A stretch of 63,460 nt of DNA, counting the filler, from Octopus bimaculoides (taxonomy: Eukaryota), in assembly GCF_001194135.2 (NCBI RefSeq). It is 5 parts of 5 records of this genome, joined end to end, with 100 filler letters (N's around TTAATTAATTAA, not from the genome) between each part and the next. Parts side by side here need not be neighbours in the genome. Positions count along the whole stretch, not along the records: positions 1 to 23,243 come from NC_068994.1; 4 more parts are not named here. The stretch is one strand, 5' to 3'. A model generated the notes under the pieces. That model was not told the origin of the DNA and made no database searches. It worked only from the letters and a program-made list of their open reading frames with translations. Below are positions 1 to 22,397 of this stretch, piece by piece. The position numbers and the translations under genes are program-made. Position 1 is the first letter of the stretch. Every line of letters begins with the position of its first letter.

Positions 1-1162
1 TACAAGAAAATATCAGAGACCCTTTATATTCCATTTTCTACCATATCTTCATTTATTCAAAGATATGAAAAATCGGGAATAAGATCCGGTGCACCACGCA
101 AGATTTCCCCTAGATCTTTAAGAAAAATGAAGCAAAGATTCGAAAAAAAACGCAATGATCACCAGAAAGGAGTTGCAAGAAGATTTGTTAGCTTCAGGGA
201 CTAGTGTTACACTACGAACAATCAGCAATGAACTTCATAAGAATGAACTGAAGTCACGCTGTCCTAGAAAAACTCCACTGTTGACTAAAAGGCATAGAGA
301 TGTCTGTTTAAAATTTGTTTATGAACATAAAGATAAATCTGATACATTCTGAGAAAATATTCTATGGACAGACGAGTCGAAAATTGAATTGTATGGACGA
401 AATCCGCGTAGCCATGTTTGGAGGAAAGATGGTACTGCCTATTCACTGAAAAACACAATTCCTACTGTAAAGTTTGGAGGTGGAAACATCACGGTGTGGG
501 GGTGTTTCTCTGTAAATGGCACTGGCAATTTACATGTGATAGGTGGTAGAATGAATGCAGAGATGAACCAAAATATTTTGAATAATAATTTATGGGACTC
601 TGCAGAAAAGCTCCAGCTTTATAAAGGGTGAGTTTCACGACAGGATAACGATCCTAAGCACACGGCGAAGTCTACCAAAAATGGATTGTCAATCACAATA
701 TAAAATTATTAGAATGGCCAAGTCAGTCACCTGACTTGAACCCCATTGAAAATTTGTGGCATCATTTGAAAATTAAAATTCATTCAAGAGCCCCAACGTG
801 CATTCCAGATTTGAAGAAAATTTGTCAAGAAGAATGGGAAAAAAAATTCTAAAGAAACATGCGAGTCATTGATTAAGAACTACAAGAAGAGATTGGTTGA
901 AGTGGAAATGAATAATGGTTACGCTACGAAGTTTTAAATCAGAATTATCAGTTATTTATGTTCTGTACGAATACTTGTTTCACCCCTAAATATTTATAAT
1001 TGTATATAAATTCATTAGTTACTATAATTTATTAATTTCTTTTGCATATTCTTAGTTTATGCATGTGTATGCAAATATAGTATTGGTATATTGCATTTAT
1101 GTTCATTGGAAATTAAATAATTAAGAAAATTGACACGTACGAATATTTGTTTCCCCCCACTG
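1..1162 (+). mobile_element. Tc1-like DNA transposon, 5' end outside window, transposase disrupted by stops/frameshifts (coding remnant 1-937)
   Basis: Translation gives GAPRK (GRPR-like), WTDESKIELYG (D1, ~364), TVKFGGGNITVWGCF, QDNDPKHTAK (D2, ~640), WPSQSPDLNPIENLW (E, ~715) and GYATKF* (stop 935-937). Right TIR ends ...TTCCCCCCACTG at 1162 followed by TA. Confidence 0.95.
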
Positions 1163-1537: not shown

Positions 1538-1710
1538 ATCATTTGTATCAAAGTGTATTTGAAGTGTATCCGTATTCATACAGTTGGGACATTCCTTTTT
1601 AATATCAGTTCGGAGTTTGAATAGACTAGTATTCAATGATTTTACGGCTGATTCTAAAGACACCACTGAAGAATTTACATCGTGAATTATGTTTTGAATA
1701 ATACTCATAT
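1538..1710 (-). CDS. PROM1-like: Prominin-like coding exon (extracellular loop 1, coiled region), phase 1 to 0
   Basis: Acceptor ttttcctttttattag|AT, donor GAT|gtaaga. 173 nt without stops: (N)MSIIQNIIHDVNSSVVSLESAVKSLNTSLFKLRTDIKKECPNCMNTDTLQIHFDTND. Joins in frame to the 3252-3347 exon; the heptad-like pattern plus Cys pair matches prominin loop 1. Confidence 0.8.
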
Positions 1711-3251
1711 CTAATAAAAAGGAAAATAAAACAATATGTTGAAAGTAAATATTTTAGAAAATATCTATTTCATTGAAGAACATAAATGTTGTTTGTATTG
1801 TAAATAATATTAGTACTATGGTGGTACCCGAGTCAGTTGAAACTAGGTAAAATGCGATACAGTATTTACTCTTTTTCTCTCTATCTTACTCTTTCCCCTA
1901 AATATTGTCATCTTACAATGATCTTTATTCTTTTCATCTAGGCAATTTTCCGTGTTACTTTTCTCCCAAATACATTCGCTTGCTTCGATGCCTTACTCTA
2001 ACTATACATTTCCTATCATACCTGGAACTTAAGATGTTTCCAACTCTTAAGATGTTTCCAATTCCAACACTTCTTGAACCTCTAACGATTTAAATTAACA
2101 TCGTACTAATATTTCCTAAATAATGATGTATTAGTTAGATATCAATTAAATATTAGTTAAACAGCATTCATATTAATAACTCATAAATAAATATATATTT
2201 CTTTATTGCCCAGAGGGGGCTAAACATAGTGTAAGTCGATTATATGGACCCCAGTGCGTAACTGGTACTTATTTAATCGACCTCGAAAGGATGAAAGACA
2301 ATACTTGTATAATACATATTTTCTTTGCTATGTGTAAACTCCTTTAATATAAACTTTTAGTACCCCCAAAAAAGAAATGCTGTATTGAACATCTATTTGC
2401 TCCGAATATCATTTATTTATTTATTTGTTTATTTATATATTTATGTACTTATCTAATTTATCTATTTGTTGTGCAAATAATTATTGTACTCTGTGTATAC
2501 AAAATTGTTTACACGGATAATTTCAAATTCCGGTTCGGAGAGGGGGAAAGTCGATTGCATCGACTCCAGTGTTTAACTGGTATTTATTTTATCGACCCTG
2601 AAAGGATGAAAGGCAAAAACGACCTTGACGGCATTTGACACAGAACGGTACAGATCGTAAAGACGGACGAAATGCCGCTAAGCATTTTGCCCGGGGTGCT
2701 TACGATTCTTCCAGCTCGTTGCTATAAATATTTACATGGATATTAAATTTTTATGGTAGGGCAGAATAATTCAAATAAAGCGGAGTGAGTATATACATGC
2801 GTTGTTGCATGCACATCGAAATTATTAACAATAATGTTGAGTTCTAACACTAATATCAAAACAAATTACCTTACTTTCTGGCAACCTTTTATTTCAGTAA
2901 ACTATGGGTGATTCAGTAGACATCAGGTAACAAATCAAAACTGAATCTGTTCGTTGTTTTTTATAACATGCTAAAACTTGATTCTGATATTTCTGAGGAT
3001 ATACTTTTAAGTGTATTTATAATTGAATATATTCAAGATTCCCCATAACTTTAGGTGTCAATCTTTAAGCTACTTTTCATCCAGTTGTATTTCAGAAATT
3101 GTACTGGTTTGTAAGAGAAACTTACTACGTAATTTTGGAAGTAAACTATATTAATACGATTTGCCGTCTAGGACAGTTGCTCGTAGTACGTTTGTTTTTT
3201 AATGAGTTTGATGATAAATTATCTGGAACGTTGTAAAAAGAGAAAACTTAC

Positions 3252-3347
3252 TTTTTTCAAACAGACGAAGATTGCTAAATTGTTCCTTAATGTGTGTGGC
3301 AGCATCAATATCGGTTTGTAATCCACCGCCAACATTTGTTCCAATAT
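3252..3347 (-). CDS. PROM1-like: Prominin-like coding exon, phase 1 to 1
   Basis: Acceptor ccttatttttaaag|AT, donor AAAA|gtaagt. 96 nt: (x)IGTNVGGGLQTDIDAATHIKEQFSNLRLFEK. GGG at the position of the vertebrate PROM1 INSVLGGGI segment (recalled). Confidence 0.8.
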
Positions 3348-3839
3348 CTTTAAAAATAAGGTTTAAAAAATACTAAGTGAACTAATTTCACTGATTAATA
3401 TAACATCAATCTAAAAGTTTATAAAAATCATACGAGAAATATTCACTTTCAAGTAAGAATCGTCATGAAAATTTGTTTATAGACTAAATCACATCAGATT
3501 TTTTTTAATGTGCATTAAGTATCAAGGAAGTATTCTGTTGGTTACACCGTTAAATTACCTTTCAACTAACAGTGCAAACACTGATTGCAATATAGGTAGA
3601 ATGTTAATGGTGGAGGGTTTTTTTTCAAATCTGGGAGAAAATATTAAAAGGAGTAAATATGTATCTACTCAATAAAAAGGGTCCGTTACTTTATTTTTTA
3701 CCTTTTGACATCAAGTATTCAGATCCCATCCTGGATGCATTGCAGAACAAGTGAAATGAAAGGACCAAAATAAAAACAGTGCATAAAAGGGGTACTAGAC
3801 TCCCATTTAAAACATAAGATCTACCTTAGCTGCTGTATA

Positions 3840-6800
3840 CTAGCAGAAAGGCCGCCCCTCTGTACGGTTTTATGCTACTTACTTGATAATGTTTTCACAT
3901 TTGATTCCCAATTCTAATAATTTTTATGTTATTTTACGTCTAATTATTTATTTGTATAATAGTGCTCACTTGCGTAGTAAATATTGCTTTCATTATTTTG
4001 CTTTCATTATTTTACCACAGTCATAATCTCTGTAGTCCAATTACAGAGGTGGGAGCACTTTGTTAAGTTTTACTTTCCTTTCAAAGCAACATAGAGATTT
4101 CAGCTCAGCAGTCAATCTGTAAGCTTTGCAGTGTGTGTGCGAGGGAGAGAGGCGGGGGAGAGAGAACATTGCAAACAATGAATGAAATAAACAGGAAATG
4201 AAAAATTCGTATAAACAAAAGGGCATAACTACAGATGTTAATGCCCCGACTTTGTTGCCTCATAACATCCAGAAAACGGATACTTTTAACAATGTTTTTT
4301 ACAAATGCCACTTAGATGTTGTGGCTTCAGAGTATATAGGGATTTATGGAAAAGAATTTTCCCGAGGAGTGCAGAGAGGAGTTTGGAAAAATTCACGCGA
4401 TCCGACTTTTTCCCTCATAACTTCCAGAAAATTGGTATTTCTTTATTGAAAGTTTATACAAATACCGTTGAAACAGCACGGATTACGATTATAAAGAAAT
4501 GTTTTGCTAAATTTTTTCGGAAGGGGTGGGTAGAGGAGCTTCAGATCAGGAAGACCAAATATGTTAGAACTACTGTTTTGATGGGAATTTTCCCACTTTT
4601 TTAAACAAGTCTTCCAAATGATGGGGTAGGGTGGGGGCATCTTTGTATGCGAAAAAGTTTTGAAAAATCCACTCTCCCATCATCCCACTCAACACTTATT
4701 TTGGCCAACTTTTGTAGCACTTCAAAACCACGGGAGGAGCCTTTACGATAAAAATATCGTTAATGTTTTCAGAGGGAGAAGTGAGTTATTTAAGGGAGAT
4801 TTGGTTGTTGTTTCTAGCACATCCCAAGACAACCCTACATGTTTCTTTATCACTCTCGCAGGTATTGATGTTTTTCAATAATTTTCTCCCTTTGAATAAA
4901 TACATTTATATGCTAAAGAAAAGAAAATTTGAAAAATACTGAATTTTTTGCAATCCCACACCCTGCCCCCGATTGTTTCTGTTAATAAATTAAAATACTG
5001 GAGAACCTGCGGTCATTGCTGACATTTATACACAGTAATTTAAAGATAATTCATTTTAATAGCATACTTTTCTGTTAGAAAACGTTTTTTTTCTGACACA
5101 TACGCACACGGCTTCGCTTGATTGAGTTGGGATACAAATTTAAATTACAACTTTTTTGTTGCATGTATTCCACCAATGGACCACGCATGTGTTACTTTGG
5201 CATCATCATTCTATAAAATGCGTTTAATGGGAGAAAAATATTGAAAAAATATCAATAATTATGCGAGTGAAAACGGAAAGTGATTTGGGCTGTGCTAGAA
5301 ACAACAGCGAAACCTTCCCTTGAATTGTTCACTTTTTTTTTTTACTGAAAGGCTCCCATGGTTTTTAATGAAAAAATGGCTAAAAACTGTCCGGGTAGTT
5401 ATTATTGTAAAGCTTATAGCGTTCCAAACGATAACAACAAAATCATTTCTTCTTTTTTTTACAAAATTTATACTGGTATATTAAAAACAACAACCAAAAC
5501 TCCCTTGAACTGTTCACCTTTTCCTCTGAAAATATTTACATTTTTTTTTACCATAAAGCTCTTCCCATGGTTTTAAGTTAAAGAAAAAATAGTCAAAATC
5601 GGTCCGGATAATTATTATTGTGAGGTTCATAGCGTTTCAAACAGCTATAACAACAAAATCACTTCTTCGTTTAAAAAACAAATCATACCGGTATATTTAA
5701 AAAAATTTCATTTTATCAAAAATATTCATTTAACAAACTCCGGAAACTGATAATATTATTGAAATTGTGCTTCATATCAAAGTTATACAGCTATTTTGTG
5801 TAATAGCATGCTTTCATTCAACGCAAAATCACTTATAAATTATACCAGTATATAAACAAAAATTCTCATTTTATCAAAACTATTCATTTGACAAACTCCA
5901 GAAACTGATAATATTCTTGAAAGTGTGCGTCGTATCAAAGATATTCACCTATTGTTAAATTATCATTAATGAAAGTATAAGCGAAAGAGCGTGAGAGACT
6001 GTTGCAAATGAAATGGGTAAATCTCGCCTGCAACGAATTAATATTGTTTATCGTTAAACATTAACATCTACTCAGCAGAGAATGCAATGAATATTTAAAT
6101 TTGCGAAAAATTGGACGCAATGAATGCAATGAATATTTAAATTTGTGAAAAACTGGACGTAGTGAATGCAAGGAATTTGTGAAATAGTGAATGCAATGAA
6201 ATATGCAATGAATAGTGAATGCAATGAATAGTAAAATATGCAATGAATAGTGAATGCAATGAAATTTGTGAAAAACTGGAGTTCAAAAATTGAATAAACT
6301 TCAGAAATCGAAATTATAGGAAATTTCTTAGAAAATGAATTTATAAAAATATTTCCAAGCAGTCAAGACCTTAATAATTGTTTTCTTTTAGTAGTTTTAG
6401 TAACCTAATTAATAAGCAATTTTCTCCATTATAGCATAGAAGAAGTAGATAGGCCGCCGTCCGGATGGTTCTCTTCTAGCTACTCAATAATATTTCCATA
6501 TTTGATTCCCAATTCTAATAATTTTTATGATATTTTAAGTCTAATTGTATTTTTTTGTATTATAGTACTCATTTGCTTAGTAAATATTGCTTTCATTATT
6601 TTATCAGTCATAATCTCTCTTTTTTAAACAAACATCAAGGTAGTCCAACTACGTTTAATATGCCAAAAAATAGTAGCGATCACATAAAGATATTTTGATA
6701 CCTATAGCGTATCAAATTCAGCCATAGCAACAAATTCACTTGCTAATTCTTAGATAACGACGGGAAGGAAATAAGTCACATGAGTTCGAAGCTTCAATAA

Positions 6801-7279
6801 GTTTTAATCATTTGTCCAATATAATTTATTTTCAGTATGTATAAATAATAATCTGAGGACATTTACACAGCTAATTTAAGTAAAAAAAAAGAAAAACTCG
6901 ATTTCCTCATCTGAAATAACGAAATAAAACTTGAAATGAAAAAATTGCAATAAATATATATTAAATAGATTATTATTAATAAAAACAATTAGAGGCGGGA
7001 GAGAGAGAAAGTGAGAGGCTGTGTTGCAAATGAAAACGAAAACTTTTGCCTGAACATATTAATATTGTTTATCAAATGTTAAACTACTCTGCACGTAAAG
7101 CTTGGCAACAAATTCTTAAATTTGTGATAGTAAATGATAACAGTGCCTTTTTATCGATATATATTAACAGAGGAATTTATAAAAATATTCCAGAGTGTGA
7201 AACCTATAATATGGCTATTACGGAGGGTGTAACTAACTAACTATCTATCTAACAGACATCACAGAAATTTATATGTAGA
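3840..7279 (-). mobile_element. Non-autonomous Helitron (composite/tandem)
   Basis: On the minus strand it starts A|TCTACATATAAATTTCTG (TC at 7279-7278) and ends with an imperfect CCG...CGG hairpin then CTAG|T (3843-3840), i.e. inserted in an AT target with no TSD. Internal modules are duplicated (3850-4030 ~ 6450-6620; 5985-6055 ~ 7000-7075). Contains GAATGCAATGAAT-type minisatellite at ~6080-6270. Confidence 0.75.
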
Positions 7280-7690
7280 TATATACCTGAGTCAATCTGT
7301 TATATATATTTATCATTAATAATTGGTAGAACTTGGACAGATACACACATTCACACATTCACACACAAAAGTCTGGTGCTGTGAGAACAGATGGGAATGG
7401 TGTTTCCTTACTTTTACAAATATACCCAAATTTAAAATGATCTTTCATATGTGTATTTGGTGTGCAAGATTCTTGATGTGCATAATGAACCAGTGCGTGT
7501 GTTTTTTATTACCGGCATAATGCCTCTCCCAAAGTTTAATTGTATTCAAATGATTTAATATAACGACAGCATTCATCCGGCATGTGTTGAAATATGCCAA
7601 AACAAATTAATTCCTCACAAATATGTTACTTTACATATAATCTATGTGTTAATTCTATTTACTGAAACTTGCTAAAAAACATGTTTTGTT

Positions 7691-9320
7691 TCAAAGTAGT
7701 ATCTCCTTGTCGACACAATTGTCAGTAATCACAGACGTAATTGTCAATAATCATACTGTTTCCATTTCTCTCAACCAATATTTTTACATTCATTCGAATT
7801 CTAGATAATTCAACGTACAACTGACCATGTGAGAAGAATTGTGTTGGAAGATGTATTCCAATTTGTTAAAAAATCTGTGCCTTGTTACACGTCAAGGCGG
7901 AAGCTGGCTTGACAGGAAATTGTTTGCGTGTAAATGTGAATGGAAATTCCATTTCTTGAGATACATGTGATATACTTTGGATTAGCGGAGTTGATCCTGC
8001 ATAAGGACCAGAAGCAACCCCAGCCTCACTAACATGATCATGTAAACTGATAATGATGTAGCGTGTGCCATTGCAATGTCCATTAGTAGCATCTAAATTT
8101 CTAAGAAGCACTATGCATCATTTTTTTCCTTCAGTTTGAGAATGTGTGGTGGAAACCCTGATGGTGTAAGTTTGTTGATGAACTCGATTGCGTACAGAGT
8201 TCTATTATCAACTGTATCTGAGCTTCTGTATATTTTTAGCTCACCAGGGATTCTAGTCAACAGATAATCATTCACAAATTGTGCTGCTTCATTTGTAGGA
8301 GTAAAAATGATTCCATTTGCAAGCCACATAGAGTTTGTGAAGTTATTTTTTAGGTTAGCATGTACAAAATCACGTAGATCTGAAGATCTGAAAGAGTACC
8401 ACTTTCAAGGCAAAGATCATTGGGTAGTTTGATTTTGAATTCACCTAGGCTTTGTTCATCAGAAATGTTACCATTTCCTACATGAAGAAGGTAATTAACA
8501 AACTATTTTTCTATAAGAAATCTTAGATTGGTTGTCAACTCCACTACTTCCACATGATCTCAAAGAAAAGATTGCTTTAGTGTTGCATCAACTCTTTGTG
8601 ATCCGACATCATTATTTTGAAGTAGAATGTTCTCCTCTCGAGATACCCTAACCAGTCGGTCATGTGTAGCGGAAACAGAATCATGTCTACGTGCTTATTT
8701 CGATATCTGTTTCAGTCGCTTTGCCCTGGTTTCATCTGATTCAGTTGCCCGTCTTTCTGCCGTTGTGCCTTTGCTGATAAATTTTCTTTTTCAGTCGCAT
8801 ATTTTTCTTTTGGACGCTCCATGCTAAATTGCAAAATTTAAATGTGATATTTGTGTAATAGCGAAATCAAACTTTGAGTGTGCGTGCTTATTCTAGAGAG
8901 ACAATGTGAGTGTGTGTGAGAGAGAGAAAATTGCAACCATTCAATGAAAATAAACATGAAATGAAAAAATTGTATTAGTGAAAGCTCGTTAAAAACTATC
9001 TTGTTTAGTATGCTAGAAATAGCAGTGATCATGTAGTTATTATTGTAAGGCTTATAGCGTTCCAAGCAGTCATGGAAACTGACACAAGGCACAATTTCAA
9101 GAATACTATCAAAGTTATACAGCTATTTTGTGTAATAGCATGCATTCATTCATTCCGCAAAATCACTTGAAAATTATACCGGTATATTTAAAAAGCAGCC
9201 ATACCAACAAAATCACTTCTTTATTATTTTTTTTTTAAAGTTATACCGGTATTTAAAGAATTTTAATTTTTCAAAACTATCCATTTAACAAACTCCGGAA
9301 ACTGATAATATTCTTGAAAT
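7691..9320 (-). mobile_element. Internally deleted Helitron with Pif1-like helicase pseudogene (coding remnant 7691-8822)
   Basis: Minus-strand motifs LKQSFL*DHVEVVELTTNLR, YLLHVGNG, FTPTN, EFINKLTPSGFPPHILKLK, MLLRNLD..GHCNGTR, RKQFPVK...TCNKAQ, FSHGQLYVELSR and C-terminal TDNCVDKEILL* (stop 7691-7693). The 5' non-coding part 8830-9320 shares modules with 4100-4220 and 5380-5920. Confidence 0.92.
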
Positions 9321-9324
9321 TGAA

Positions 9325-9541
9325 GGCGGCGAGCTGGCAGAATCGTTAGCGCACCGGGCGAAATGCTTAGCGGTATTTCGTCTGCCACTACTTTCTGAGT
9401 TCAAATTCCGCCAAAGTCGACTTGCCGTTCATCCTTTCGGGGTCGATAATTAAGTACCAGTGAAACACTGGGTGGTCGATGTAATCGACTCTCCCCTCTC
9501 CCCACGATTTCAGGGCTTGTGCCTACAGTAGAAAGGATATT
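9325..9541 (+). mobile_element. tRNA-derived SINE family S1 (representative copy). Other copies or fragments at about 2200-2300, 2540-2715(-), 9564-9623, 19700-19905(-), 27590-27720, 33760-33908, 36060-36270, 39495-39660(-), 42100-42420, 44170-44330(-)
   Basis: GGCGGCGAGCTGGCAGAATCGTTAG head with A-box-like TGGCAGAATCG and B-box-like GAGTTCAAATTCC. The same core (GTCGACTTTGCCTTTCATCCTTTCGGGGTCGAT...AGTACCAG) recurs in at least 10 places in both orientations. Confidence 0.85.
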
Positions 9542-10161
9542 ATATCCTTGTTATACTTTATAAGGCGGCGAGCTGGCAGAAACATTAGCACGCCGGGTGA
9601 AATGCTCAGCGGTATTTCCCCCGNNNNNNNNNNNNNNNNNNNNNNNNNNNNNNNNNNNNNNNNNNNNNNNNNNNNNNNNNNNNNNNNNNNNNNNNNNNNN
9701 NNNNNNNNNNNNNNNNNNNNNNNNNNNNNNNNNNNNNNNNNNNNNNNNNNNNNNNNNNNNNNNNNNNNNNNNNNNNNNNNNNNNNNNNNNNNNNNNNNNN
9801 NNNNNNNNNNNNNNNNNNNNNNNNNNNNNNNNNNNNNNNNNNNNNNNNNNNNNNNNNNNNNNNNNNNNNNNNNNNNNNNNNNNNNNNNNNNNNNNNNNNN
9901 NNNNNNNNNNNNNNNNNNNNNNNNNNNNNNNNNNNNNNNNNNNNNNNNNNNNNNNNNNNNNNNNNNNNNNNNNNNNNNNNNNNNNNNNNNNNNNNNNNNN
10001 NNNNNNNNNNNNNNNNNNNNNNNNNNNNNNNNNNNNNNNNNNNNNNNNNNNNNNNNNNNNNNNNNNNNNNNNNNNNNNNNNNNNNNNNNNNNNNNNNNNN
10101 NNNNNNNNNNNNNNNNNNNNNNNNNNNNNNNNNNNNNNNNNNNNNNNNNNNNNNNNNNNNN

Positions 10162-10223
<62 letters not shown>

Positions 10224-10225
<2 letters not shown>

Positions 10226-10800
10226 GCCCGGATGCAGTACCAGGCAGTGACTCTCATGGCTTCTGATCTTAATTGATTGGAAGTGTTATCATGTACATTG
10301 TTTTGTCTTGGTATAAAAGATGGGCTACAGCAAATATTCTGCTTAATACCACAGATTTGCTTGTCAGTTGTTTGACTTTAACCAGTTGAGCATGTCCCTT
10401 GGTGGCTGACGATATGTGCATCTCTGATCATGAGCACAAATAGTGGGGAAGCATCATAGCCATGTGTCGATAGGAATTATTTGGGGTTTGAATAATTCAC
10501 CTTTGGAAACATTTGTGTTTTGCTCAACATCCTTAAACAAACTTTATTCAGGGACCTTTTGAGCGGAATGGGCTACTCGACCTGAAGAAAATTCTAACTG
10601 GACCTCACCTGCGAGGTCACGCGCTGTTTATCTTGATATGAGATCACCATGTCGCGCACATATGGTTGGGATGCATGTGCCTGGTGTACCCTTATCAGAC
10701 GGGTAGTCATGATGAGCATACTGGGCTTCGTATATTTTACCCCAGTGTCACTTTGATGGTATGCACTGCTTCCTCACTCTATAATAATAATGATGATGAT
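10224..10800 (+). mobile_element. ~560-bp unclassified interspersed repeat with simple-repeat tail (copy 1)
   Basis: Homologous along its length to 11333-11883 (+) and 33189-33650 (-). Preceded by (TAA)n and followed by ATAATAATAATGATGATGAT. No ORF. Confidence 0.8.
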
Positions 10801-11260
10801 TTTTTCATCATTTGTAACTGTAAAGTCAATTATTTTGCACTTTTTATTCGCTTTATCTACAACTACTAAATCAGGTCTTCTAGCGTCTGAATGTTAAAGT
10901 TCCACAACATCTTATATTTCTTACTTTCTAATACTTTACTAAGGTTCATGTTCATACCATTTATCAGTATGGTCAAAATCAATTTGAGAGGTATAGAGAA
11001 AAGAACAAAGTACCGGAACCTAGCCATTGAATTACAAAGACTATGGAAAGTGCGGGTAAAATGTATCACAGTAGTTATAGGTGTATTAGGATCTATCCCT
11101 AAAGATTTGAACAGATGGATAGAGGATATAGGCATAAATCCCAATTTAGTACAGCCCCAGAAAACAGTGCTATTAGGGACAGCTAGGATATTTAGGCGGG
11201 TTCTTGTTAGGAATTCCGTTCTCCAATAGCCTAATCTGTTGTGCGTATATGAATAACGAA
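10799..11260 (+). mobile_element. R4/Dong-clade non-LTR retrotransposon 3' end with inverted 5' segment
   Basis: Plus strand 10975-11229: KINLRGIEKRTKYRNLAIELQRLWKV...VVIGVLGSIPK...QKTVLLGTARIFRRVL, then (TAA)n tail. Minus strand 10970-10799: KWYEHEP..KVLES..KMLWNFNIQT..ARRPDLVVVDK..CKIIDFTVTNDEKI (RLE PD-(D/E)xK region). Confidence 0.9.
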
Positions 11261-11274
11261 TAATAATAATAATG

Positions 11275-11332
<58 letters not shown>

Positions 11333-11334
<2 letters not shown>

Positions 11335-11883
11335 CAATACCAGGCACTGGCTCTCATGGCTTCAGATTTTAACTGACTGTAAGTGTTATCATGCACATTG
11401 TTTTGCATTGTTTTAAAAGATGGGTTACAGCAAATATTCTGCTTAATACCACAGATTTGCTTGTCAGTAGTTTGACCTTAACCAGTTGAGCATGTCCCTT
11501 AACGACTGACGATATGTGCATCTCTGCTCACGTGCAGCAGTAGTGGGAGAGCATCATAGCCATGTGTTGAGAGGAATTCTTTGGGTTAGAATAATTCACC
11601 TCTGGAAACATAGGTGTTTCGTTCAGCATCTTTAAACAACCCTTATTCAACATCTTTAAACAATCCTTATTTTGAGCTATCCGACTTGAAGAAAATTCTA
11701 ACTGGGCCCCACCTGCAAGGTTGTGCGCTCTTTACCTTGATATGAGATCACCATGTCGCGCACATATGGTTGTGACGCATGTGCCTGGTGTACTCTTATC
11801 AGACGGGTAGTCATGATGGGTATATTGGGCTTTGTATATTTTACCCCAGTGTCACTTTGATAGCATGCACTGCTCTTTCACTC
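11333..11883 (+). mobile_element. ~560-bp unclassified interspersed repeat (copy 2)
   Basis: Begins right after (TAA)n with TGCAATACCAGGCA and aligns to copy 1 through CACTGCTCTTTCACTC. Confidence 0.8.
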
Positions 11884-12375
11884 AAGAAGAAGAAATTGAG
11901 GGTGGAGAGGGAAGTGCTACCTTCGAATGAGTTTATTGAAAGGTGAGTGGAAGTTGTGAAAATGGCAAGAGTGGATGGTATTCTATAAGTGAAGACCAGT
12001 AGGTCGGAGAAAAGAAATTGGAGAGGGCACTTTCCCTTAGTGTTCAGGGAGATCTTGTAGAGTGGGGTTCCTCTATTATCCCTAGAGGTCCTTCTGTATC
12101 AGGAGGACAACATCGCTATCATCCCGCCTTTGTTTTTTTTTAACCTGTGTGTACTATGTATATTTCCCTTCCTTTTCATTGTATACCATATATATTTATA
12201 CTTTTTTGTTTATTAATTTATTTTATCATTTCATTATATGTAAACCGCCATACTTTATACCTATTTTGTATTGTCTCCCTCTTCCTTCACCCTGGTTACA
12301 AATAAATGAAATCATTATTATTATTTTATTATCGTCAGCAACATTATTATTTTTAAAAAATTATTTAAAACTTAC

Positions 12376-12496
12376 TTCAAATAATTTGTCAATATAGTCG
12401 TTGACATATTCCACACTTGTCTTTATTGTCTTTGGCACGGATTTAATATTTTTCTCTACTTGTGATATAGATGCAAGCGTACACGCAAGGCCAGTA
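12376..12496 (-). CDS. PROM1-like: Prominin-like coding exon (end of TM2 and start of loop 1), phase 2 to 0
   Basis: Acceptor tttcccatatctgtttcag|T, donor GAA|gtaagt. 121 nt: (I)TGLACTLASISQVEKNIKSVPKTIKTSVEYVNDYIDKLFE. Completes the split codon AT|T from the 21419-21618 exon. Confidence 0.88.
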
Positions 12497-14376
12497 CTGA
12501 AACAGATATGGGAAAATGCATTATATTTCGTAAATAATGTCATGTCGCAGGTTTCGTGCCGTTAAATAATCATACAGAAGTAAAAATAATTTCTAATAAA
12601 GCTATTTAACAAACTAATTTAATCAAGCAAAACAGAAACCAGATAAAAACGAGTCGCGCAGTAAATTGAAATATTCACATATTTCTCTTATATTCAAATA
12701 TGGAGAACAACATGACTTTGACTTGCTACCATAGTTACAGTTTTTTTGTTTTTGCTTTTTCAGAAAACTTCAGAAATGTTGTCTAGTCAGATAGTTTTAT
12801 CGCATACCATCTGCCAATATGTTTTGGTGTTAAGATCATCCTAATATTCACCCTGGCTTCTAGATACAACATTTCTTGCAAGTGATTTATTATCTAAACC
12901 TCAAAATATTAATATTTTCATGATTACAGTACTTTGGAAAACCAAACAACAAATAAGTGATGAAATTTTTACCGATGGACTCATGAAATCTAGATTTCCT
13001 GTTATTAAATTTCGTGTTTACATACAAAGGTCACTTCGTTGACGAAGTTCATCACAGGCAAAATTTTGAAGTAACTATCAACTTAGTAAAGATAAATCTT
13101 ATACTCCATATTCTGCACACATATCATAACTTCCTTCAAATGTTTGGCCTATCGCTGTACAGGCAAATAAAACAGTGTAATGCGTTTGGAGAAAAACATT
13201 ATCCATACTATATGAACAGTTATTGCCTAGCACTGCAATTTGGATATGATCCTCATCCGAACCGCGAAGGATGCCCCCTATCATCACACAGCTCACAAAG
13301 ACTTCCACCTCCCAAATTATAAATCTTTACCAAAATCTTTTCTACCAACTTTGCAGAAACCTTCTCTACTGACCCTGACTGATCCTTACATTGCCCAAAA
13401 ACTAATGCGTCCTAGAGTTAGTCACTATCCTTCTCAATTTCTCTCTTCCTCTCTCTCTCTCTCTCTCGCTCTCTCCCTAACTATCTATCTATCTCTCCCT
13501 ATCTATCTTTCCCTATCTTTCCGTCTTTCCCTATCAATCTCTCTCTCTCTCTCTATCTATCTCTCTTTCCCTATCTATCTCTCTTTCCCTATCTACCTCA
13601 CTTTGCCTATCTCTCTTTCCCTATCTCTCTCTCTCTCTATTTATCTACCTATCTATCTATCTCTCTACCTACCTCTCTACCTATCTCTTAAGATATTATG
13701 TTGATTTTTGTAAACTGTGTATTGCAGTGTATTCCATTCCTAAGAAAGGCCACCTCTTTGACTTCTGATCTATTACTTAATCCTTGAATCTCAAATGTGT
13801 TGGAGGCCACAAACTAACAACAAACTTCTTTCCACACATTGAATCTGTCTTTGTCTCTCCCTCTCTCTCTCCCCCTCTCTCTCTCCCCCTCTCTCTCTCT
13901 CTTTCTCTCTCTCACTGTCTCCCTTTCTCTCTTTCCTGTCTCCCTTTATCTCTCTCTCTTTCCCTCTCTTTCTCCCTTTTTCTGTCTCTCACACTCACAT
14001 GCACACAATCAGCTCGCACACATACGCACTCATGCATTCACATTTCTTCGATCGATGGCTTCTCAGATCGCACTCTCAGGTCTCTTGCTGATGGAACCCT
14101 GTTTGAACTCCACTCTCAACTGTAGTATGCTCTAGAATTCAATTTTATCTTCGACGCTTTTTTTCCCTTTTATCAATGGCCTAGTTCCCGTCACCAACAG
14201 AGCCCACAGATACGCACATCTCAAAATCTGTTCTTCATCACAACCAAACAGATATTTCAGCCTCCAGCAACTCTAAACATTTACAAGACTTAGGTTAAAC
14301 ACGACACAGAGTACTGCATCTACATCTAGGATTGTATTGTGTTTTATACACACAAACACACACACATATACATACA

Positions 14377-14412
<36 letters not shown>

Positions 14413-14445
14413 TACATACATACATACATACATATATACATACAT

Positions 14446-15985
14446 AAGAACCCACTATATGGGAAAAACTATAGCCACTCATAATAAAAAGGAGTACTGG
14501 TGGAATGTCCCAGTGAAGACCTCAATAAAATGTAAGCACTGCAGACCTGATATAATGATCTGGGAAAGAGAAGAGAAACTGTGTGCAGTTGAAGAAATTA
14601 TCTGCCCAGCGGATATTAACAAAGCTGAAGATCACTGAAAAAAGGAATACCTACGGTGAACTATTGAGAAATCTGCAGTTACTCTATCCAGATTACAAGT
14701 TCAGGTCTATACTTGTATTGGGGCCCTGGGATATGTAACACACTACCTAAATACCAATCTTGAGAAATTAAGCTTCTCAAACCAGAAAGTAGAAAGCTAA
14801 TTCGAAGTCTACAGTCCCAATCCATCACTGGAACTGTAAAAATCAGTACAACTTTCCAGACATTTATCATTTAAATATATATGAGCATATCTAGATCTGA
14901 AACTGTATGCATGAGAATACATACCTAAAGCAGAACATACAAATCTGAAATGACGAACATATATCAGCAGAAGACTTCGCATGGATATGTTAGTAGAAAG
15001 CTCCGAGATGATAGTAACATTGATCATCAAAGCAGTCTACTATGGACCAATAACCAGATTACTACCTCCCACTTTGAAGGGTACGTGTTTGCAATTCAGG
15101 AACAGGAAGTATCAACCAAATACCTGATGTACAAAAGGGACAGAGATGCAGGAAAAGCAGTAAAATGTGACAACCGATGCAGATTTTGTGGAGTTAACAC
15201 TGAAGATATCACTCACATCATAAGCAGTTGTCCGAAAATGTCACCACAGTATTATCTACCAATGAGACGGAATAAGGACACTATAATGAAATCCGTCGGA
15301 AGGATAACCCCGAGGACAAAGAAATAAGAACCCACAGCATGGTGGAAGCCGTAGCCACTCGTAATATAAAGGAGTACTGGTGGAATTTCCCCAGTGAAAA
15401 CCTGAATAAAATGTAAGTACAACAGACCTGATATAATGCTTTAGGATAGAGAAGAGAAACTGTGTACAGTTGTTGAAATTAGCTGTCCAGTGGATGTTAG
15501 CATAAAGCTGAAGATCAGTGAAAAAAAGAATACCTACGCTGAACTGTTGAGAAATCTACAGTTACTCTATCTAGATTACAAGTACAGGTTTACGCCTGTA
15601 ATTATTGAGGCCCTAGGATATGTAACACACTGCCTAAATACCAATCTTGATAAGTTATGCTTCTCAAAACCAGAAAAGAGAAAGCCGATTCGAAGTCAAC
15701 AGATCCAAGCCATCATTGAAACTGTAAAAATCTGTAAAACTTTCCAGAAGTTTATCATTTGAATATATATGTGCATGTCTAGATATACAACTATATGCAT
15801 GAGAATACATACATAAAAAAACATATAAATCTGCACCTATGCATACATACACACATACATACATTCGAAATACCCTGTTGTTGATGTTGAAATTCCAATG
15901 AGGGAGTCTTGGATCTAGGTTAGAAACAACTCTTTCTCTGTTGGCAAGAAATCTTACAATAAAACTGAATAATGACATACATATC
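14446..15985 (+). mobile_element. Two tandem 5'-truncated R4-clade (RLE) element 3' ends (14446-14950 and ~14951-15985)
   Basis: EYWWNVPVKTSIKCKH.RPDIMIW..VE..CPAD; FEGYVFAIQEQE; CCHC finger CRFCGVNTEDITHIISSC; C-terminus IIETVKICKTFQKFII*. Both copies share a 3' UTR. The first copy starts directly after (CATA)n. Confidence 0.9.
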
Positions 15986-17340
15986 TTTGACCGCATTCAA
16001 AGAAAGGCTACTCAACTGATGGGAATACATCGGCTTATAAGCATGCTATAAAACTCGATTGTGGACGTGCCATTTCTTCTCTCTGCCTTTTTCTACTACA
16101 GTGACCTCTAATCCTCGGATTTTGTTGGTCTCGTGTCACCTTTATTCAGGAATTTCCCATACACTCGTTTCTCTTATTGTCATTCATATTTCGTTCACTA
16201 CAGCCCAATTTTAACCTCTTCCCCCAATCTCTTCACATACTTTTCTTGCTTCGTATGCATGCTTTTTCTTGCATATTTTCAAGAGGAATATTAATAGCAT
16301 TATTCTCACCGGTATCCAAGAGCCTCGAAGGAAAGGCCACTGAGTTTTTACAGACCTTCGCTAAAGATGGGCCACAGTTACGCTAAATCTTTTTGAAGCC
16401 CTCATTGAAGACCTCTTGTTACCCTTGTTGCATCCAACCTCGTCCTCGTCCCCATCTCGCACTAACCACTATTCTTACAATTCCTTAAAAGAACGTCGGC
16501 TTTCTGTAACCTTCTTATCTGCCTGTCTGTAGGTTTTGATCCTTAAAGGCACCAAGGAAGACCTACAAGGATATTTGGGCACTGTCCCTTTGTCCAGACT
16601 CAGTAAAAAAAAAGTGTGTATCTTGGTGATGAGAAGACATATTCATTCAAGTATATAATCAAACCAACGTAAAATAGTATATTTCAAATAGCAATGGTAA
16701 CATTGTTTTCAGTTCTAATACAATGTAACTTATATACATTTTATATAGTAGCATTGCTGCAACAGCCTATGATGTAAGTTGCTGATAGTGAGTATTTTTA
16801 CATTTCTTTCAAATGAGAGCTTTCATTTGAATTGGAACTTTATAAACATTCGTATCGAACTTGCCTTCGAATTTGCATAACGCACCAAGAGTCTGTACAG
16901 TACTGTTATTACATACAATGAAGATTTGATCTCACCAAATTACTATCTATGATTACATGCGGAAACGTAAACTTGCTTCCATAGGAATTCGAAGGTCAAA
17001 TCGAGGTTTCCCTTATTCAATCATTGCTTGCTCATGTTTTCATCCTTGTATGGTCTTTATTAAGTTAGTTGTTGTTGCACTCATTCTCATTTTTATGATG
17101 CAAAAATCAGAATGAAAATGCCTATTTACATAAGCGTTAACTAAGCCATCTTTGAAGAAATCATTATCGCCAAAACTGTACCTGAATAACTAGGGGAGAC
17201 CACTGTCCAGACACTACAAAAATACAGATAGCCAGCGAACGACTAAAAGGCACCGGGTGTAAAATTGTTCCAACGTTTTAGTTGAAGTATTCAATAGGTA
17301 CAATTCTGGCGAAATTATTTAATAACATAATGAAAAGGAC

Positions 17341-17757
17341 AACACTTGACTGGATCACTGAGGGAAAACTCAACACTAATGGAAAAACTTAACATTTGAC
17401 TGGATCACTGAGAGAATAACTCAACACTTGACTGGATCACTGAAGGAAAACTCAACACTTGACTGGATCACTGAAGGAAAACTCAACACTTGACTGGATC
17501 ACTAATGGAAAAACTTAACATTTGACTGGATCACTGAGAGAATAACTCAACACTTGACTGGATCACTGAAGGAAAACTCAACACTTGACTGGATCACTGA
17601 GNNNNNNNNNNNNNNNNNNNNNNNNNNNNNNNNNNNNNNNNNNNNNNNNNNNACACTAATGGAAAAACTTAACATTTGACTGGATCACTGAGAGAATAAC
17701 TCAACACTTGACTGGATCACTGAAGGAAAACTCAACACTTGACTGGATCACTGAGGA
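17341..17757. repeat. Minisatellite, 31-32-bp unit AACACTTGACTGGATCACTGAAGGAAAACTC with higher-order variants, one small N gap
   Basis: About 11 head-to-tail copies read directly, with no unique spacers. Confidence 0.95.
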
Positions 17758-19240
17758 AAAAACTATATCAATTCCCATGACTTATAAAACAGAAAACACT
17801 CCAAACCCTTTTGACTTCTTTTTCACCTCAAAAAGTAACTTCTACCATCCCATCACCAACTTTGCAGGAATCGGATCATTTGAACTTCCTTATTGTGATT
17901 ACCCATTAGACATCCATATACTACGTTATGACTCAAGATCCTCATCATCATTGCGAGATTATTGATCCAAACTTCCTCTAATTTTATGATAACTATCTTT
18001 GGCATTATAGGTGCTTCATTCCTGATACATCAAGAACAGCCAGGCGAGCACGTAGTCTGTCTTCTTTCAAATTCCACAAACAACCAAAATCCACAGCCCA
18101 AGTCCACTAAGAGGTACACTTGTCGCTGCGCTGCAGCAGTTCAAGCAAAGAACGCTAATAAAAGTTTGGACGGTTTATACAGAATACCATCAATTATGCC
18201 TTTCTGTATCGCAGAACCTGCAAACTTTACCATCTCCTAAACTGCGGCAAAACATTTTGATCCTTGTCAAAAGTTCTCTACGAAATTAATCGAATTCTCC
18301 TTCTCTCAACTTCTTAACCATAATCCTAAAAGCCTCCACATTTGCAGCCTGTTTGCGATTATCTCCACAATGTAGACTCTTCCAAAATAACCTTTTTCTA
18401 TTACACCAGTCTTATCTCTACGCACATATTTCCACTAAGTACTTAACTCGAACTATTCCACTAGTCCTAATGACCCCCTTCCGTTATCATCAAGCAATTC
18501 ACTCCACAGTAAAGCCCTTCGATCTACGAATCTCTTTACATGTATATGTGTATGTGTGCGTGCGCGCACGTGATTTGTGTGTGTGTGTGTGTGTGTGCGT
18601 ATGCGTGTGTGTGCACGAGGGTGTGGTGAAAAGTTCCTAGCTTTAAGAGTATCGCGAACGGCCTGGCTAGAGGCCCAACCTTCCGAGTTCTTTTACAGAG
18701 ATTAGAAAAATTGAAATATTAAAGTGTTGTTTCACTCAACAGCAGAACGTTCGACTGTGTCTGGTACACATATTACTAGACAATATTGCCCGCCTGTGGT
18801 CAACTCCGGTCTGTCCCAAGGTTCGATTATGTTCCCTATATTCATTCACATATACGTCAACAACCTATTTGCTGTCACCTCCTACAATGCCCGCTCCTAC
18901 GCAGATAATACCACTCTTTATTCTTCCTTAGCCTTTTACACTACAGCCTCAGCTACAGACAGACAGATAGACAGACCAGCTACAGACAGGCAGACCGACA
19001 GACAGGCAGACCGACAGACAGGCAGACCGACAGACAGGCAGACCGACAGACAGACATGTATTGAGTTGTATACGATATAGAGCTGTATACGGTAGCCGCG
19101 TCCACCGGTGGCGGATAATGAAACGGTCTCTATATAGGGAGGACAGCTGCGAAAACAAAAAAACATTTTCATGATTAATAAACAGTTGTGGACTAACAAC
19201 AGCTGCATTTTCTAGGGTGCCGTGATCCAACAGTTAGCAC
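17758..19240 (+). mobile_element. Degenerate L2/CR1/Jockey-type LINE remnants (APE end and RT), interrupted by microsatellites and a short mariner-end fragment at ~18607-18715
   Basis: TPNPFDFFFTS resembles the APE C-terminal PNxLDLFLTS motif. VNSGLSQGSIMFPIFIHIYVNNL...SYADNTTLY resembles RT PQGS and YADD motifs. Confidence 0.65.
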
Positions 19241-21418
19241 AGTTCTACAGCAGTCACACCTTTGATTTTCAGCTGAGTCTAGGACGTAAGGATCGATAAT
19301 GAGTTTGTATGTGTTTAAGTCTGTTCGCGACTTCCAGGCAACTAGGACAGTAGCGAAAGGATGGTATCCGGTAGCTGTACATTTGCTATTTGAGTGTGAT
19401 AGCCATGAGTATACGGAGAAGTTAGCAGCAAACTAAAATTGCGCTCGAAAAATATGGCACTCCTGTCTAGGAGTTGCGATGCCAGCTAAAATCTGGGGAC
19501 ATTGTGAAAAAAAGAGAGATATTAACCACCCTCTCAACTAAATTGGGTTACCGCATTCAGTGGACTCTCCATTTCTGAAGTCGAAATAAAAGGAAAAGCA
19601 AGAAAACAAATCAGATTGTATTTTGGCTTCTGGAACACTGGAATGATGATGGATGTAGCCAATTCTGGAAAGTCTGGATGATAGTTGATAGGGAACTGAT
19701 ACTTATTTCATTACTGCCCACAAGGGGCTACACACAGAGGGGACAAACAAGGACAGACAAAAGGATTAAGTCGATTACATCGACCCCAGTGCATAACTGG
19801 TACTTAATTTATCGACCCCGAAAGGGGAATTTGAACTCAGAACGTAACGGCAGACGAAATACCGCTAAGCATTTCGCCCGGCGCGCTAACGTTTCTGCCA
19901 GGGAACTGATACTGTTGCACTGTCAAAACATAACTGAGGTATATAGAATTTAAGAGAGCTAGTTTCTAGTTTGAAAACAAAAATGCTGTACAGAGTGAAG
20001 TTGTGTTGGCCTAGTGCTGACGAACACTCTTTCAGCAATCCGTGGCCGCTTTCTGTTATTATATCCAATAGGCTAATGAAAGTGAGGTTAGCTCTGCCTG
20101 GAAATTTAAGTATAAATGTTTTTATTAGCTATGATCTACGATGACAAATGAGCTATATAAGAAGGGATGCACCAATTATGTCTGATCATGGCAAACACTT
20201 TCTTCCATTGGTTTTATAGCTGGTATCATCCACGGTCGAAACGATATCTGTTGGACTACTTACTTAGCCTCAGGGACAATATTGAGGACATAAGCTGTGT
20301 CTGAAGTACAAAAAAGTTGGGATAATTGCGCAGAAGAGACTGAATGAGAGACTAAGATTTCCAAAGTGCCACATGCACTTGCATGAAAAGAACCAGTAAA
20401 TTAGCTACAATTTATGCTTTCCGCAGATGAGGACTACGCAATATTTCTTTCTCTGTTAGCATCTTTGCGTGTTTGTGGTCGAGGTATGCGTTGTGTGTAA
20501 AGATATTTTATTGTTATACACATACAGCAAATCCTTCCAGAAAGGTGTTGTGTGAGAGAATTATACTAGTGGATATATAACAGTCTACGAAAGATATGGA
20601 TTACTATACAGTTGTGTTCATAGGGTTGTTGCCGGAGCCTTGTGGAGCTTTAGGTGTTTTCGCTCAATAAACAATCACAATGCCCGGTCTGGGAATGGAA
20701 ACCGCGATCATACGACAGCGAGTCCGCTACCCTAACCACTGGGCCACATACATACGTACACACATGCATACGTACACACAGACAAACATGCAAGCACACA
20801 CATACACACACACACACACACAACCTTTACGCTAAAAATATATGAAGACTTCCGAAAAGGAATGCAACAATAACTTGTTCTTATTCATTTGGTTTGAAAT
20901 ATAAGTGATACAAATGGCGCTACATCACCGTAGATTAAATGCAGATTATGCTTCAAGAAGATAAGACAAATATGTCATTCTGACTACTCTGCAGCTCCTT
21001 AAATTAATCACTTCATACTGGCCACTTCACACCACTTAATTGTACTAGACATGACTACGCTATACCACCATAATTATATTTAGATACAGCTAACGGAAAG
21101 AATACTAAAAATCTTTCATCACTTAATCTGTGATACCATATCATATTCTCGCTATGATATATTTCCATTGGTGTTTTTGTTCGGATCAGATGATTAAGAA
21201 TCTATGCCATCTTGCGCGATGTTTCACAGATCAAGCTCTACTACTCACTCTTTTATCTTGCCTGTATTGTCTAACCAGTCTATGATATTTAATCATGCAA
21301 ACAAAAATGACAATTGAAAATCAGTTATGTGGTCATAAGTATACTACTATAACACGTGCAAGATATTTTCTTTATGTTATTTTGAATTAGAAAGAAACGA
21401 AAGTTTAATTTGACTTAC

Positions 21419-21618
21419 ATGCATAATATTATAGTCGTCAGGAGCAAGAGCACATATATTCTCCGTCTCGTGTTACTTACATGTTTTTGCATTCGTTTAC
21501 CACCACAGTTATTGCAATTTCGGCAACAGCAAAAGCACAGTCCGACCAAAGAGAAAATAATGATAAAGAGAATGCCAACAACAACAGCAATAACAAATCC
21601 AATGTTTTTCATGATTAA
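21419..21618 (-). CDS. PROM1-like: Prominin-like coding exon (TM1, Cys-rich loop, TM2), phase 0 to 2
   Basis: Acceptor ttttctttttattttttatattctag|TTA, donor TGCAT|gtaagt. 200 nt: LIMKNIGFVIAVVVGILFIIIFSLVGLCFCCCRNCNNCGGKRMQKHVSNTRRRIYVLLLLTTIILC. TM helix followed by the CFCCCRxCxNCGG signature typical of prominins. Confidence 0.93.
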
Positions 21619-22324: not shown

Positions 22325-22397
22325 TGGCCAGCCATGAGATTCGAACTCACATCCCTGTGATTACGCGTCAAGTGCTTTACCATTAAGCTAAACTGCC
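22325..22397 (-). pseudogene. tRNA-Thr(CGT)-like sequence embedded in a ~302-bp tandem unit
   Basis: GGCAGTTTAGCTTAATGGTAAAGCACTTGACGCGTAATCACAGGGATGTGAGTTCGAATCTCATGGCTGGCCA. D stem GCTT/AAGC, T arm GTGAG-TTCGAAT-CTCAT, anticodon loop CGCGTAA. Acceptor and anticodon stems are mismatched. Confidence 0.6.

What the first reader, a model, noticed from the sequence alone, without database searches (positions are those of the whole stretch)
1538..21618. Prominin gene hidden in TE-filled introns, with vertebrate-like exon phases
Four minus-strand exons splice into a prominin N-terminal half; most are absent or only partly shown in the ORF track. Phases are 0-2, 2-0, 1-1 and 1-0 with lengths 200, 121, 96 and 173 nt. 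From memory, the matching human PROM1 exons start at the same residues (IVYYEAG vs LIMKNIG) and share these phases, implying ancient intron positions. Prominins shape microvilli and photoreceptor membranes, which is relevant if the host is a cephalopod (inference).
Basis: partly seen in the sequence, partly recalled or inferred. Interest (0 to 1): 0.7.

Follow-up and report, generated by a model that had tools for sequence, protein, structure and literature searches.

The report
Unannotated 5' exons of octopus prominin gene
The four exons are real and belong to the Octopus bimaculoides prominin-1-like gene: two are missing from the RefSeq model, one further 67-nt exon is probably lost in an assembly gap, and the intron positions match those of vertebrates, which is expected for this family.

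Summary
All four minus-strand exons exist at the stated coordinates, with the stated lengths and phases and canonical AG/GT sites. Spliced A+B and C+D match Pfam Prominin (joined E=1.6e-26, 93 bits against a cut-off of 34).

The window is 100% identical to Octopus bimaculoides chromosome CM046614.1. RefSeq already names the gene "prominin-1-like" (XP_014770153.2). That model starts with a 7-nt coding exon inside the A-B intron, skips exons A and B, uses exons C and D exactly, and is also truncated at its 3' end.

Exact exon maps give these lengths:
- Argonauta: 200-121-67-96-173
- Lingula: 212-121-67-96-191
- a fish: 206-121-64-90-230
- Chinchilla and dog PROM1: 206-121-64-90-218

Intron columns and phases coincide in all of them, so the "vertebrate-like phases" claim holds.

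Correction: B (ends phase 0) cannot splice to C (starts phase 1). A roughly 67-nt phase 0-to-1 exon is missing. It is absent from all readable sequence and probably lies in the 538-N gap (9624-10161). The 51-N gap sits inside an intronic minisatellite and has no coding effect.

This is an annotation repair of a known gene, of low novelty.

The parts
21419..21618 (-). Exon A, 200 nt, phase 0 to 2. It is the counterpart of vertebrate PROM1 exon 4 and Argonauta exon 3. It encodes LIMKNIGF..., TM1, the Cys-rich loop CFCCCRNCNNCGG and the start of TM2. It is not in the RefSeq model.
   Evidence: ttctag|TTAATC ... TGCAT|gtaagt. (Prominin profile 90-190 together with B). (49% identity to Argonauta residues 109-161). 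(same length and intron columns). (hydrophobic segments at residues 5-32 and 53-78).
12376..12496 (-). Exon B, 121 nt, phase 2 to 0. It is the counterpart of vertebrate exon 5. It encodes the rest of TM2 and the start of the first large extracellular loop. It is not in the RefSeq model.
   Evidence: The counterpart is 121 nt in every mapped species and in the dog table.
3252..3347 (-). Exon C, 96 nt, phase 1 to 1. It is the counterpart of vertebrate exon 7 (90 nt). It encodes (N)IGTNVGGGLQTD... and is used by RefSeq XP_014770153.2.
   Evidence: (100% match to P0001). (RefSeq exon boundaries are identical)..
1538..1710 (-). Exon D, 173 nt, phase 1 to 0. It is the counterpart of vertebrate exon 8 (218 nt). 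It encodes the extracellular-loop helix with NSS and NTS glycosylation motifs and the CPNC motif. It is used by RefSeq.
   Evidence: (173 nt in Argonauta too).
9624..10161 (.). Assembly gap (538 N) in the B-C intron, with (AAT)n and a SINE-like repeat at its edge. It is the most likely location of the missing exon of about 67 nt, phase 0 to 1 (the vertebrate exon 6 counterpart, Q...LD + 1 nt).
   Evidence: Phase mismatch between B and C. Pfam profile positions 190-219 are unmatched. Homologues have a 64- or 67-nt exon there. No candidate exists in the readable intron or anywhere in the 79.5-kb locus, while the same filter recovers the true exon in 4 control loci.
12497..21418 (-). Intron A-B, 8.9 kb (390 nt in Argonauta). 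It holds retroelement remnants, microsatellites, and the 51-N gap (17602-17652) inside a 31-32-bp minisatellite.
   Evidence: zf-RVT at 14950-15324. (minisatellite at 17340-17770). (Argonauta intron size).
19566..19572 (-). The 7-nt first coding exon of the RefSeq model (ATGGAGA|gtccac). It supplies Met-Glu plus the first base of the Asn codon and is spliced straight to exon C. It is probably a gene-prediction device rather than a real start.
   Evidence: The donor GTCCAC is weak. No homologue starts there.
3348..12375 (-). Intron B-C, 9.0 kb including the gap. It holds a Pif1/Helitron-like fragment and two copies of a dispersed repeat of about 620 bp with an (AAT)n tail.
   Evidence: Pif1_2B at 7866-8108. 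(10162-10779 vs 11265-11883, 85.6% identity)..
155..631 (+). Tc1/mariner transposase remnant in the intron downstream of exon D.
   Evidence: HTH_Tnp_Tc3_2, E=1.3e-13. One search reported one stop codon in the translation of 155-631 (+).

Best explanation
The window holds part of the Octopus bimaculoides prominin-1-like gene on chromosome CM046614.1, minus strand of the window. Exons A, B, C and D correspond to vertebrate PROM1 exons 4, 5, 7 and 8, which are Argonauta exons 3, 4, 6 and 7.

Together they encode:
- the end of the N-terminal extracellular domain
- TM1
- the cysteine-rich cytoplasmic loop
- TM2
- the first part of the large extracellular loop of a pentaspan prominin

The introns have been inflated roughly 2- to 23-fold relative to Argonauta by transposon and satellite insertions. 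The counterpart of exon 6 (about 67 nt, phase 0 to 1) is needed to keep the frame. It is not in readable sequence and most likely sits in the 538-N gap.

The RefSeq model is truncated at both ends. It replaces the whole 5' part, including A and B, with a 7-nt start exon, and it ends by reading through a GTAAAT donor.

Shown: the exons, family membership, species, intron-position identity and the state of the annotation. Inferred: that the exons are co-spliced in vivo, that the missing exon lies in the gap, and that the protein works as other prominins do, organising curved or protruding plasma membrane such as microvilli.
For: Canonical splice sites and open frames.

Pfam Prominin at 93.2 bits, E=1.6e-26.

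The window is 100% identical to GCA_001194135.2 CM046614.1, and the RefSeq protein is named prominin-1-like. The RefSeq model uses C and D with the same boundaries.

Exons A and B align to Argonauta prominin residues 109-214.

Exon lengths:
- Argonauta 200/121/67/96/173
- Lingula 212/121/67/96/191
- fish 206/121/64/90/230
- Chinchilla 206/121/64/90/218
- dog 206/121/64/90/218

In an unconstrained MAFFT alignment the introns fall in the same columns with phases 0, 2, 0, 1, 1, 0.

Two hydrophobic segments flank CFCCCRNCNNCGG. A rough dN/dS against Argonauta is 0.3.
Against: No transcript evidence was available here for the A-to-B junction. No protein containing A+B from any octopus was found in the 5.8-billion-protein search.

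The exon 6 counterpart is not seen, so an intact reading frame is not demonstrated.

Exons 1-2 were not found. The upstream region has little readable sequence.

Identity to Argonauta is only 37% over these exons and dS is saturated. P0002 may therefore be a paralogue, and the dN/dS figure is weak.
Confidence: 0.92

Rival explanations
1. The RefSeq model is right. The expressed product starts at the intronic 7-nt exon (19572-19566) and skips A and B. This would give an N-terminally truncated prominin without TM1 and TM2, and exons A and B would be relics or belong to a rarer isoform.
For: XP_014770153.1 and .2 both carry Met-Glu-Asn joined to exon C. Exact-word homology search found no A+B-containing octopus protein.
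Against: Only 7 nt of coding sequence and a weak GTCCAC donor. No homologue has such a start. Exons A and B keep open frames, strong splice sites and the family's Cys-rich motif. The same model also ends in an obvious intron read-through, so it is a patched partial model.
Confidence: 0.05
2. The locus is a decaying or rearranged copy. The exon 6 counterpart is truly deleted, or A-B and C-D come from different copies joined by scaffolding across the gap, so no full-length prominin is made from it.
For: The missing exon is 3n+1 nt, so its absence breaks the frame. The scaffold has many gaps.
Against: Order, orientation, lengths and phases of A, B, C and D equal those of one contiguous Argonauta gene. 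All visible exons are intact. A 538-N gap bordered by repeats lies exactly in the right intron. Downstream exons of 75, 64, 153 and further lengths continue the conserved pattern.
Confidence: 0.04

Closest known systems
Octopus bimaculoides prominin-1-like, RefSeq XP_014770153.2 (314 aa)
   Same: It is the same gene and the same assembly. Exons C and D are identical in sequence and boundaries.
   Different: The model lacks exons A and B, and presumably exons 1-2 and the 67-nt exon. It starts with a 7-nt exon inside the A-B intron and stops by intron read-through. Full-length relatives are 770-890 aa.
Argonauta hians prominin-1-like GAB1604340.1 (P0002)
   Same: It is the closest full-length relative found. 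Consecutive exons are 200/121/67/96/173 nt with identical phases. It has the same Cys-rich motif.
   Different: Only 37% amino-acid identity over these exons. Introns are 0.4-2.3 kb, against 1.5-9 kb in Octopus.
Vertebrate PROM1/CD133 (Chinchilla XP_005402576.2, dog, fish prom1)
   Same: Pentaspan prominin family, PF05478. Introns fall at the same alignment columns and phases. The 121-nt exon has the same length.
   Different: Protein identity is about 25-30%. Neighbouring exons differ by whole codons: 206 vs 200, 64 vs 67, 90 vs 96, 218 vs 173 nt. Vertebrates have an optional 27-nt exon 3 before the exon A counterpart.
Lingula anatina prominin-1-A (XP_013397800.1)
   Same: It is a lophotrochozoan prominin with exons 212/121/67/96/191 nt, the same phases and the same intron columns.
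   Different: The gene is compact (15.6 kb for 28 exons). The octopus gene spans more than 20 kb for four exons.

Membership tests
Prominin (Pfam PF05478) | Sequence match to the family HMM above the curated gathering score | tested here: met
   A+B score 73.6 bits and the joined peptide 93.2 bits, against a cut-off of 34.3. Profile positions 90-295 are matched collinearly.
Prominin (Pfam PF05478) | Cysteine-rich cluster at the TM1/first cytoplasmic loop boundary | tested here: met
   CFCCCRNCNNCGG aligns with CFCCCRLCGNCGG (Argonauta), CFCCCRCCGNCGG (Lingula), FFCMCRCCDNCGG (fish) and FFCLCRCCNKCGG (Chinchilla). The feature is described in PMC5049760.
Prominin (Pfam PF05478) | Pentaspan topology (five TM segments, two large extracellular loops) | tested here: inconclusive
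   The window shows TM1 and TM2 only. Two further hydrophobic stretches, likely TM3 and TM4, are visible by eye in the RefSeq protein beyond the window. TM5 and the N-terminal signal were not recovered, because the models and the assembly are truncated.
Prominin (Pfam PF05478) | Conserved exon-intron architecture (introns concordant in position and phase among prominin genes) | tested here: met
   (four species mapped exactly). (dog table). The exception is the exon 6 counterpart, which is not visible in Octopus.
Prominin (Pfam PF05478) | Localisation to plasma-membrane protrusions and cholesterol binding | not testable with these tools
   This needs antibody or tagged-protein localisation and biochemical assays.
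Orthologue of vertebrate PROM1 specifically (as against PROM2/3 or a lineage-specific paralogue) | Phylogenetic placement or synteny | not tested
   Only the RefSeq name 'prominin-1-like' is available. No tree was built.

The most novel reading that the evidence does not exclude
Octopus bimaculoides may really lack the exon 6 counterpart and/or use an intronic, repeat-embedded alternative first exon. That would produce a prominin without TM1 and TM2, a three-span isoform unknown in the family. The full-length exons A and B would then be used only in particular tissues or not at all.
Probability: 0.04. Interest if true: 0.45.

Novelty: already known. Interest (0 to 1): 0.15.

Why it matters
The practical value is for annotation. 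The RefSeq prominin-1-like model of O. bimaculoides is truncated at both ends. It lacks the signal and N-terminal domain, TM1, the Cys-rich loop and TM2, so anyone using it would be misled in expression, phylogeny or structure work, for example on cephalopod microvillar photoreceptors.

The comparison also gives a clean example of intron positions and phases being kept between cephalopod, brachiopod, fish and mammal, including a 121-nt exon of identical length. That pattern dates these introns at least to the bilaterian ancestor. It agrees with what is already stated for prominin genes (PMC5049760) and, from general knowledge, with lophotrochozoan-vertebrate intron conservation. No new biology is revealed.

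Tried and rejected
1. I first assumed the 'MEN' start of P0001 was transcript evidence for a missing exon ending ATGGAAA. That string with a donor is not in the window. Mapping the RefSeq model showed the codons are ATG GAG A from a 7-nt exon at 19572-19566, so the idea was dropped.

2. Search for the missing exon, all negative:
- splice-constrained enumeration in the B-C intron, 116 and 114 candidates, none similar and none with strong sites
- a sliding BLOSUM scan and blastn with the Argonauta exon. Its cross-phylum controls failed, so that scan alone is weak.
- a Q-start/GT filter over the whole 79.5-kb locus, which recovers the true exon in all four control loci but nothing in Octopus

3. 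Search for exons 1-2 upstream of exon A found nothing by tblastn with Argonauta or by splice-constrained scan. Little readable sequence lies upstream.

4. PDB sequence search gave only coiled-coil noise.

5. A first tblastn run used a multi-record file and parameters that were too loose, so it gave noise. It was redone properly.

6. Literature searches found no paper on cephalopod prominin.

7. A processed pseudogene is rejected because introns are present. A chance ORF is rejected by the Pfam E-values.

8. Encoding-contig look-ups failed for P0001 and for the non-longest isoforms P0029 and P0005. They were repeated with the longest isoforms P0158 and P0155.
Full report
**Observation.** On the minus strand the four segments read as follows.
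- Exon A, 21419-21618, 200 nt: ttctag|TTAATCATG...TGCAT|gtaagt.
- Exon B, 12376-12496, 121 nt: tttcag|TACTGG...TTTGAA|gtaagt.
- Exon C, 3252-3347, 96 nt: ttaaag|ATATTGG...AAAAAA|gtaagt.
- Exon D, 1538-1710, 173 nt: tattag|ATATGAG...AATGAT|gtaaga.

A+B translate continuously to 107 aa (LIMKNIGF...DKLFE), with an Ile codon split AT|T across the junction. C+D give 89 aa (IGTNVGGG...FDTND), with an Asn codon split A|AT. In the ORF list, A, B and D lie within ORFs of 65, 60 and 59 aa. The true frame of C is not listed.

**Identity.** Pfam Prominin (PF05478) matches A+B at E=1.3e-20 (profile positions 90-190) and C+D at E=5e-4 (positions 219-295). The joined peptide scores E=1.6e-26, 93.2 bits against a gathering score of 34.3. 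Exon A and the start of exon B encode two hydrophobic segments flanking CFCCCRNCNNCGG. This is the Cys-rich TM1/loop signature of prominins (PMC5049760).

**Source and existing annotation.**
- A homology search returned one protein, P0001, which is 100% identical to C+D. Its cluster holds XP_014770153.2, "prominin-1-like [Octopus bimaculoides]".
- The encoding contig, GCA_001194135.2 CM046614.1, is 100% identical to the window over all readable parts. Window position x corresponds to L001 position 29573-x.
- Mapping the RefSeq protein exactly shows a first coding exon of 7 nt (ATGGAGA|gtccac) at window 19572-19566, inside the A-B intron.
- Beyond the window come exons of 75, 64, 92, 65, 153, 130 and 87 nt. 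The last ends in AG|GTAAAT read as Arg-stop, which is an intron read-through.
- The gene is therefore annotated and correctly named, but the model is truncated at both ends and omits exons A and B.

**Gaps.**
- The 51-N gap (17602-17652) lies within a 31-32-bp minisatellite spanning 17340-17770. This is in the A-B intron. A-to-B is in frame and collinear with the Pfam profile and all homologues, so nothing coding is affected.
- The 538-N gap (9624-10161) lies in the B-C intron. It is bordered by (AAT)n and a dispersed repeat of about 620 bp.
- B ends in phase 0, C starts in phase 1, and profile positions 190-219 are unmatched. An exon of 3n+1 nt is therefore missing.

**Comparative gene structure.** I mapped four proteins exactly onto their genomic loci, requiring GT/GC-AG introns and 100% translation identity. 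The exon lengths, starting from the first coding exon, are:

| Species | Exon lengths (nt) |
|---|---|
| Argonauta hians | 268, 53, 200, 121, 67, 96, 173, 78... |
| Lingula anatina | 274, 47, 212, 121, 67, 96, 191, 75, 64... |
| Ophioblennius (fish) | 235, 59, 206, 121, 64, 90, 230, 75, 64... |
| Chinchilla PROM1 | 229, 56, 206, 121, 64, 90, 218, 75, 64... |

- The published dog table gives 206, 121, 64, 90, 218 for exons 4-8. Exon 3 (CCAGA...TGAAG, PENVVLTLK) fixes the start of exon 4 at phase 0.
- In an unconstrained MAFFT alignment, the introns of all four species fall in identical columns with phases 0, 2, 0, 1, 1, 0. The octopus boundaries fall in the same columns.
- The start of exon A (LIMKNIG) aligns with VIYYEMG in Chinchilla.
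Human PROM1 itself was not mapped. PMC5049760 states that dog, human and mouse agree in intron position and phase.

**The missing exon.** Homologues have a 64- or 67-nt exon beginning CAA (Gln) and ending GAY-A|gtaag.
- In the readable B-C intron, none of about 115 splice-compatible open segments resembles it or has strong splice sites.
- A Q-start filter recovers the true exon in all four control loci but nothing plausible anywhere in the 79.5-kb octopus locus.
- A sliding-score scan was also negative, but its cross-phylum controls failed, so it carries little weight.
- The exon most likely lies in the 538-N gap. True loss, which would break the frame, cannot be excluded.

**Introns.**
- The A-B intron is 8.9 kb in Octopus and 390 nt in Argonauta. 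The B-C interval is 9.0 kb against about 3.0 kb. The C-D intron is 1.5 kb against 0.8 kb.
- Transposon remnants are a Tc1-type HTH (155-349, E=1.3e-13), a Pif1 2B domain (7866-8108) and zf-RVT (14950-15324).
- Dispersed copies at 85-91% identity are also present, together with many micro- and minisatellites.

**Function (inferred).** The window encodes the TM1-loop-TM2 hairpin and the first helical part of the large extracellular loop of a pentaspan prominin. By homology the protein should associate with curved or protruding plasma membrane such as microvilli. A role in octopus rhabdomeric photoreceptors is plausible but untested, and no cephalopod prominin paper was found.

**Verdict.** The observation and interpretation are correct, with two amendments. 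The exons are not contiguous, because one exon is missing. The gene is already annotated, although incompletely. Novelty is low.

Noticed in passing
window 17340-17770: A 31-32-bp minisatellite (unit about AAAACTCAACACTTGACTGGATCACTGAAGG, and a 126-bp higher-order unit at 100% identity). It is interrupted by the 51-N gap, so the gap is probably just unresolved repeat copy number.
   Followed up: yes
window 10162-10804 and 11259-11894; also L001 62488-62891: A dispersed repeat of about 400-620 bp with an (AAT)20-25 tract, SINE-like. Two copies lie 1.1 kb apart at 85.6% identity, and a third lies elsewhere in the same gene at 86-91% identity. One copy abuts the 538-N gap.
   Followed up: partly
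window 22326-22397 (-): Rfam tRNA hit at 34.8 bits (gathering score 29) that ARAGORN does not call. It may be a tRNA-derived SINE head or a decayed tRNA.
   Followed up: partly
window 19566-19572 (-): The RefSeq coding sequence starts with a 7-nt exon (ATGGAGA) with a weak GTCCAC donor. It looks like a device of the gene predictor to give a partial model a start codon.
   Followed up: yes
L001 69453-69542 (outside the window): The last RefSeq exon is 87 nt ending AGG TAA. Splitting it as AG|GTAAAT gives an 86-nt exon, exactly the length of the Argonauta counterpart. The annotated stop is therefore an intron read-through, and the 3' half of the gene is unannotated.
   Followed up: partly
window 14583-14738 (+) and 15490-15762 (+): Two similar ORF fragments (KLKITEKRNTYGELLRNLQLLYPDYKF and KLKISEKKNTYAELLRNLQLLYLDYKYRF) flank a zf-RVT fragment. 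This suggests two copies of the same retroelement tail in one intron.
   Followed up: no
window 13440-13990: A strongly CT-rich low-complexity block, (TCTC)n/(CTAT)n/(TC)69. GC skew is -0.56 over 13001-14000.
   Followed up: no
L002 (Argonauta hians GAB1604340.1), exons 8-10: The Argonauta model has 78- and 29-nt exons where other species have 75, 64 and about 150-160 nt. It lacks about 70 residues present in the octopus protein (ELVQNNSQ...KYWMAV), so that model also seems to skip exons.
   Followed up: no
P0055 (59-aa ORF on 2.4-kb Logan contigs): An ORF 70% identical to the exon D ORF, from an unnamed sequencing run. It is presumably another octopod's genomic copy of the same exon.
   Followed up: no
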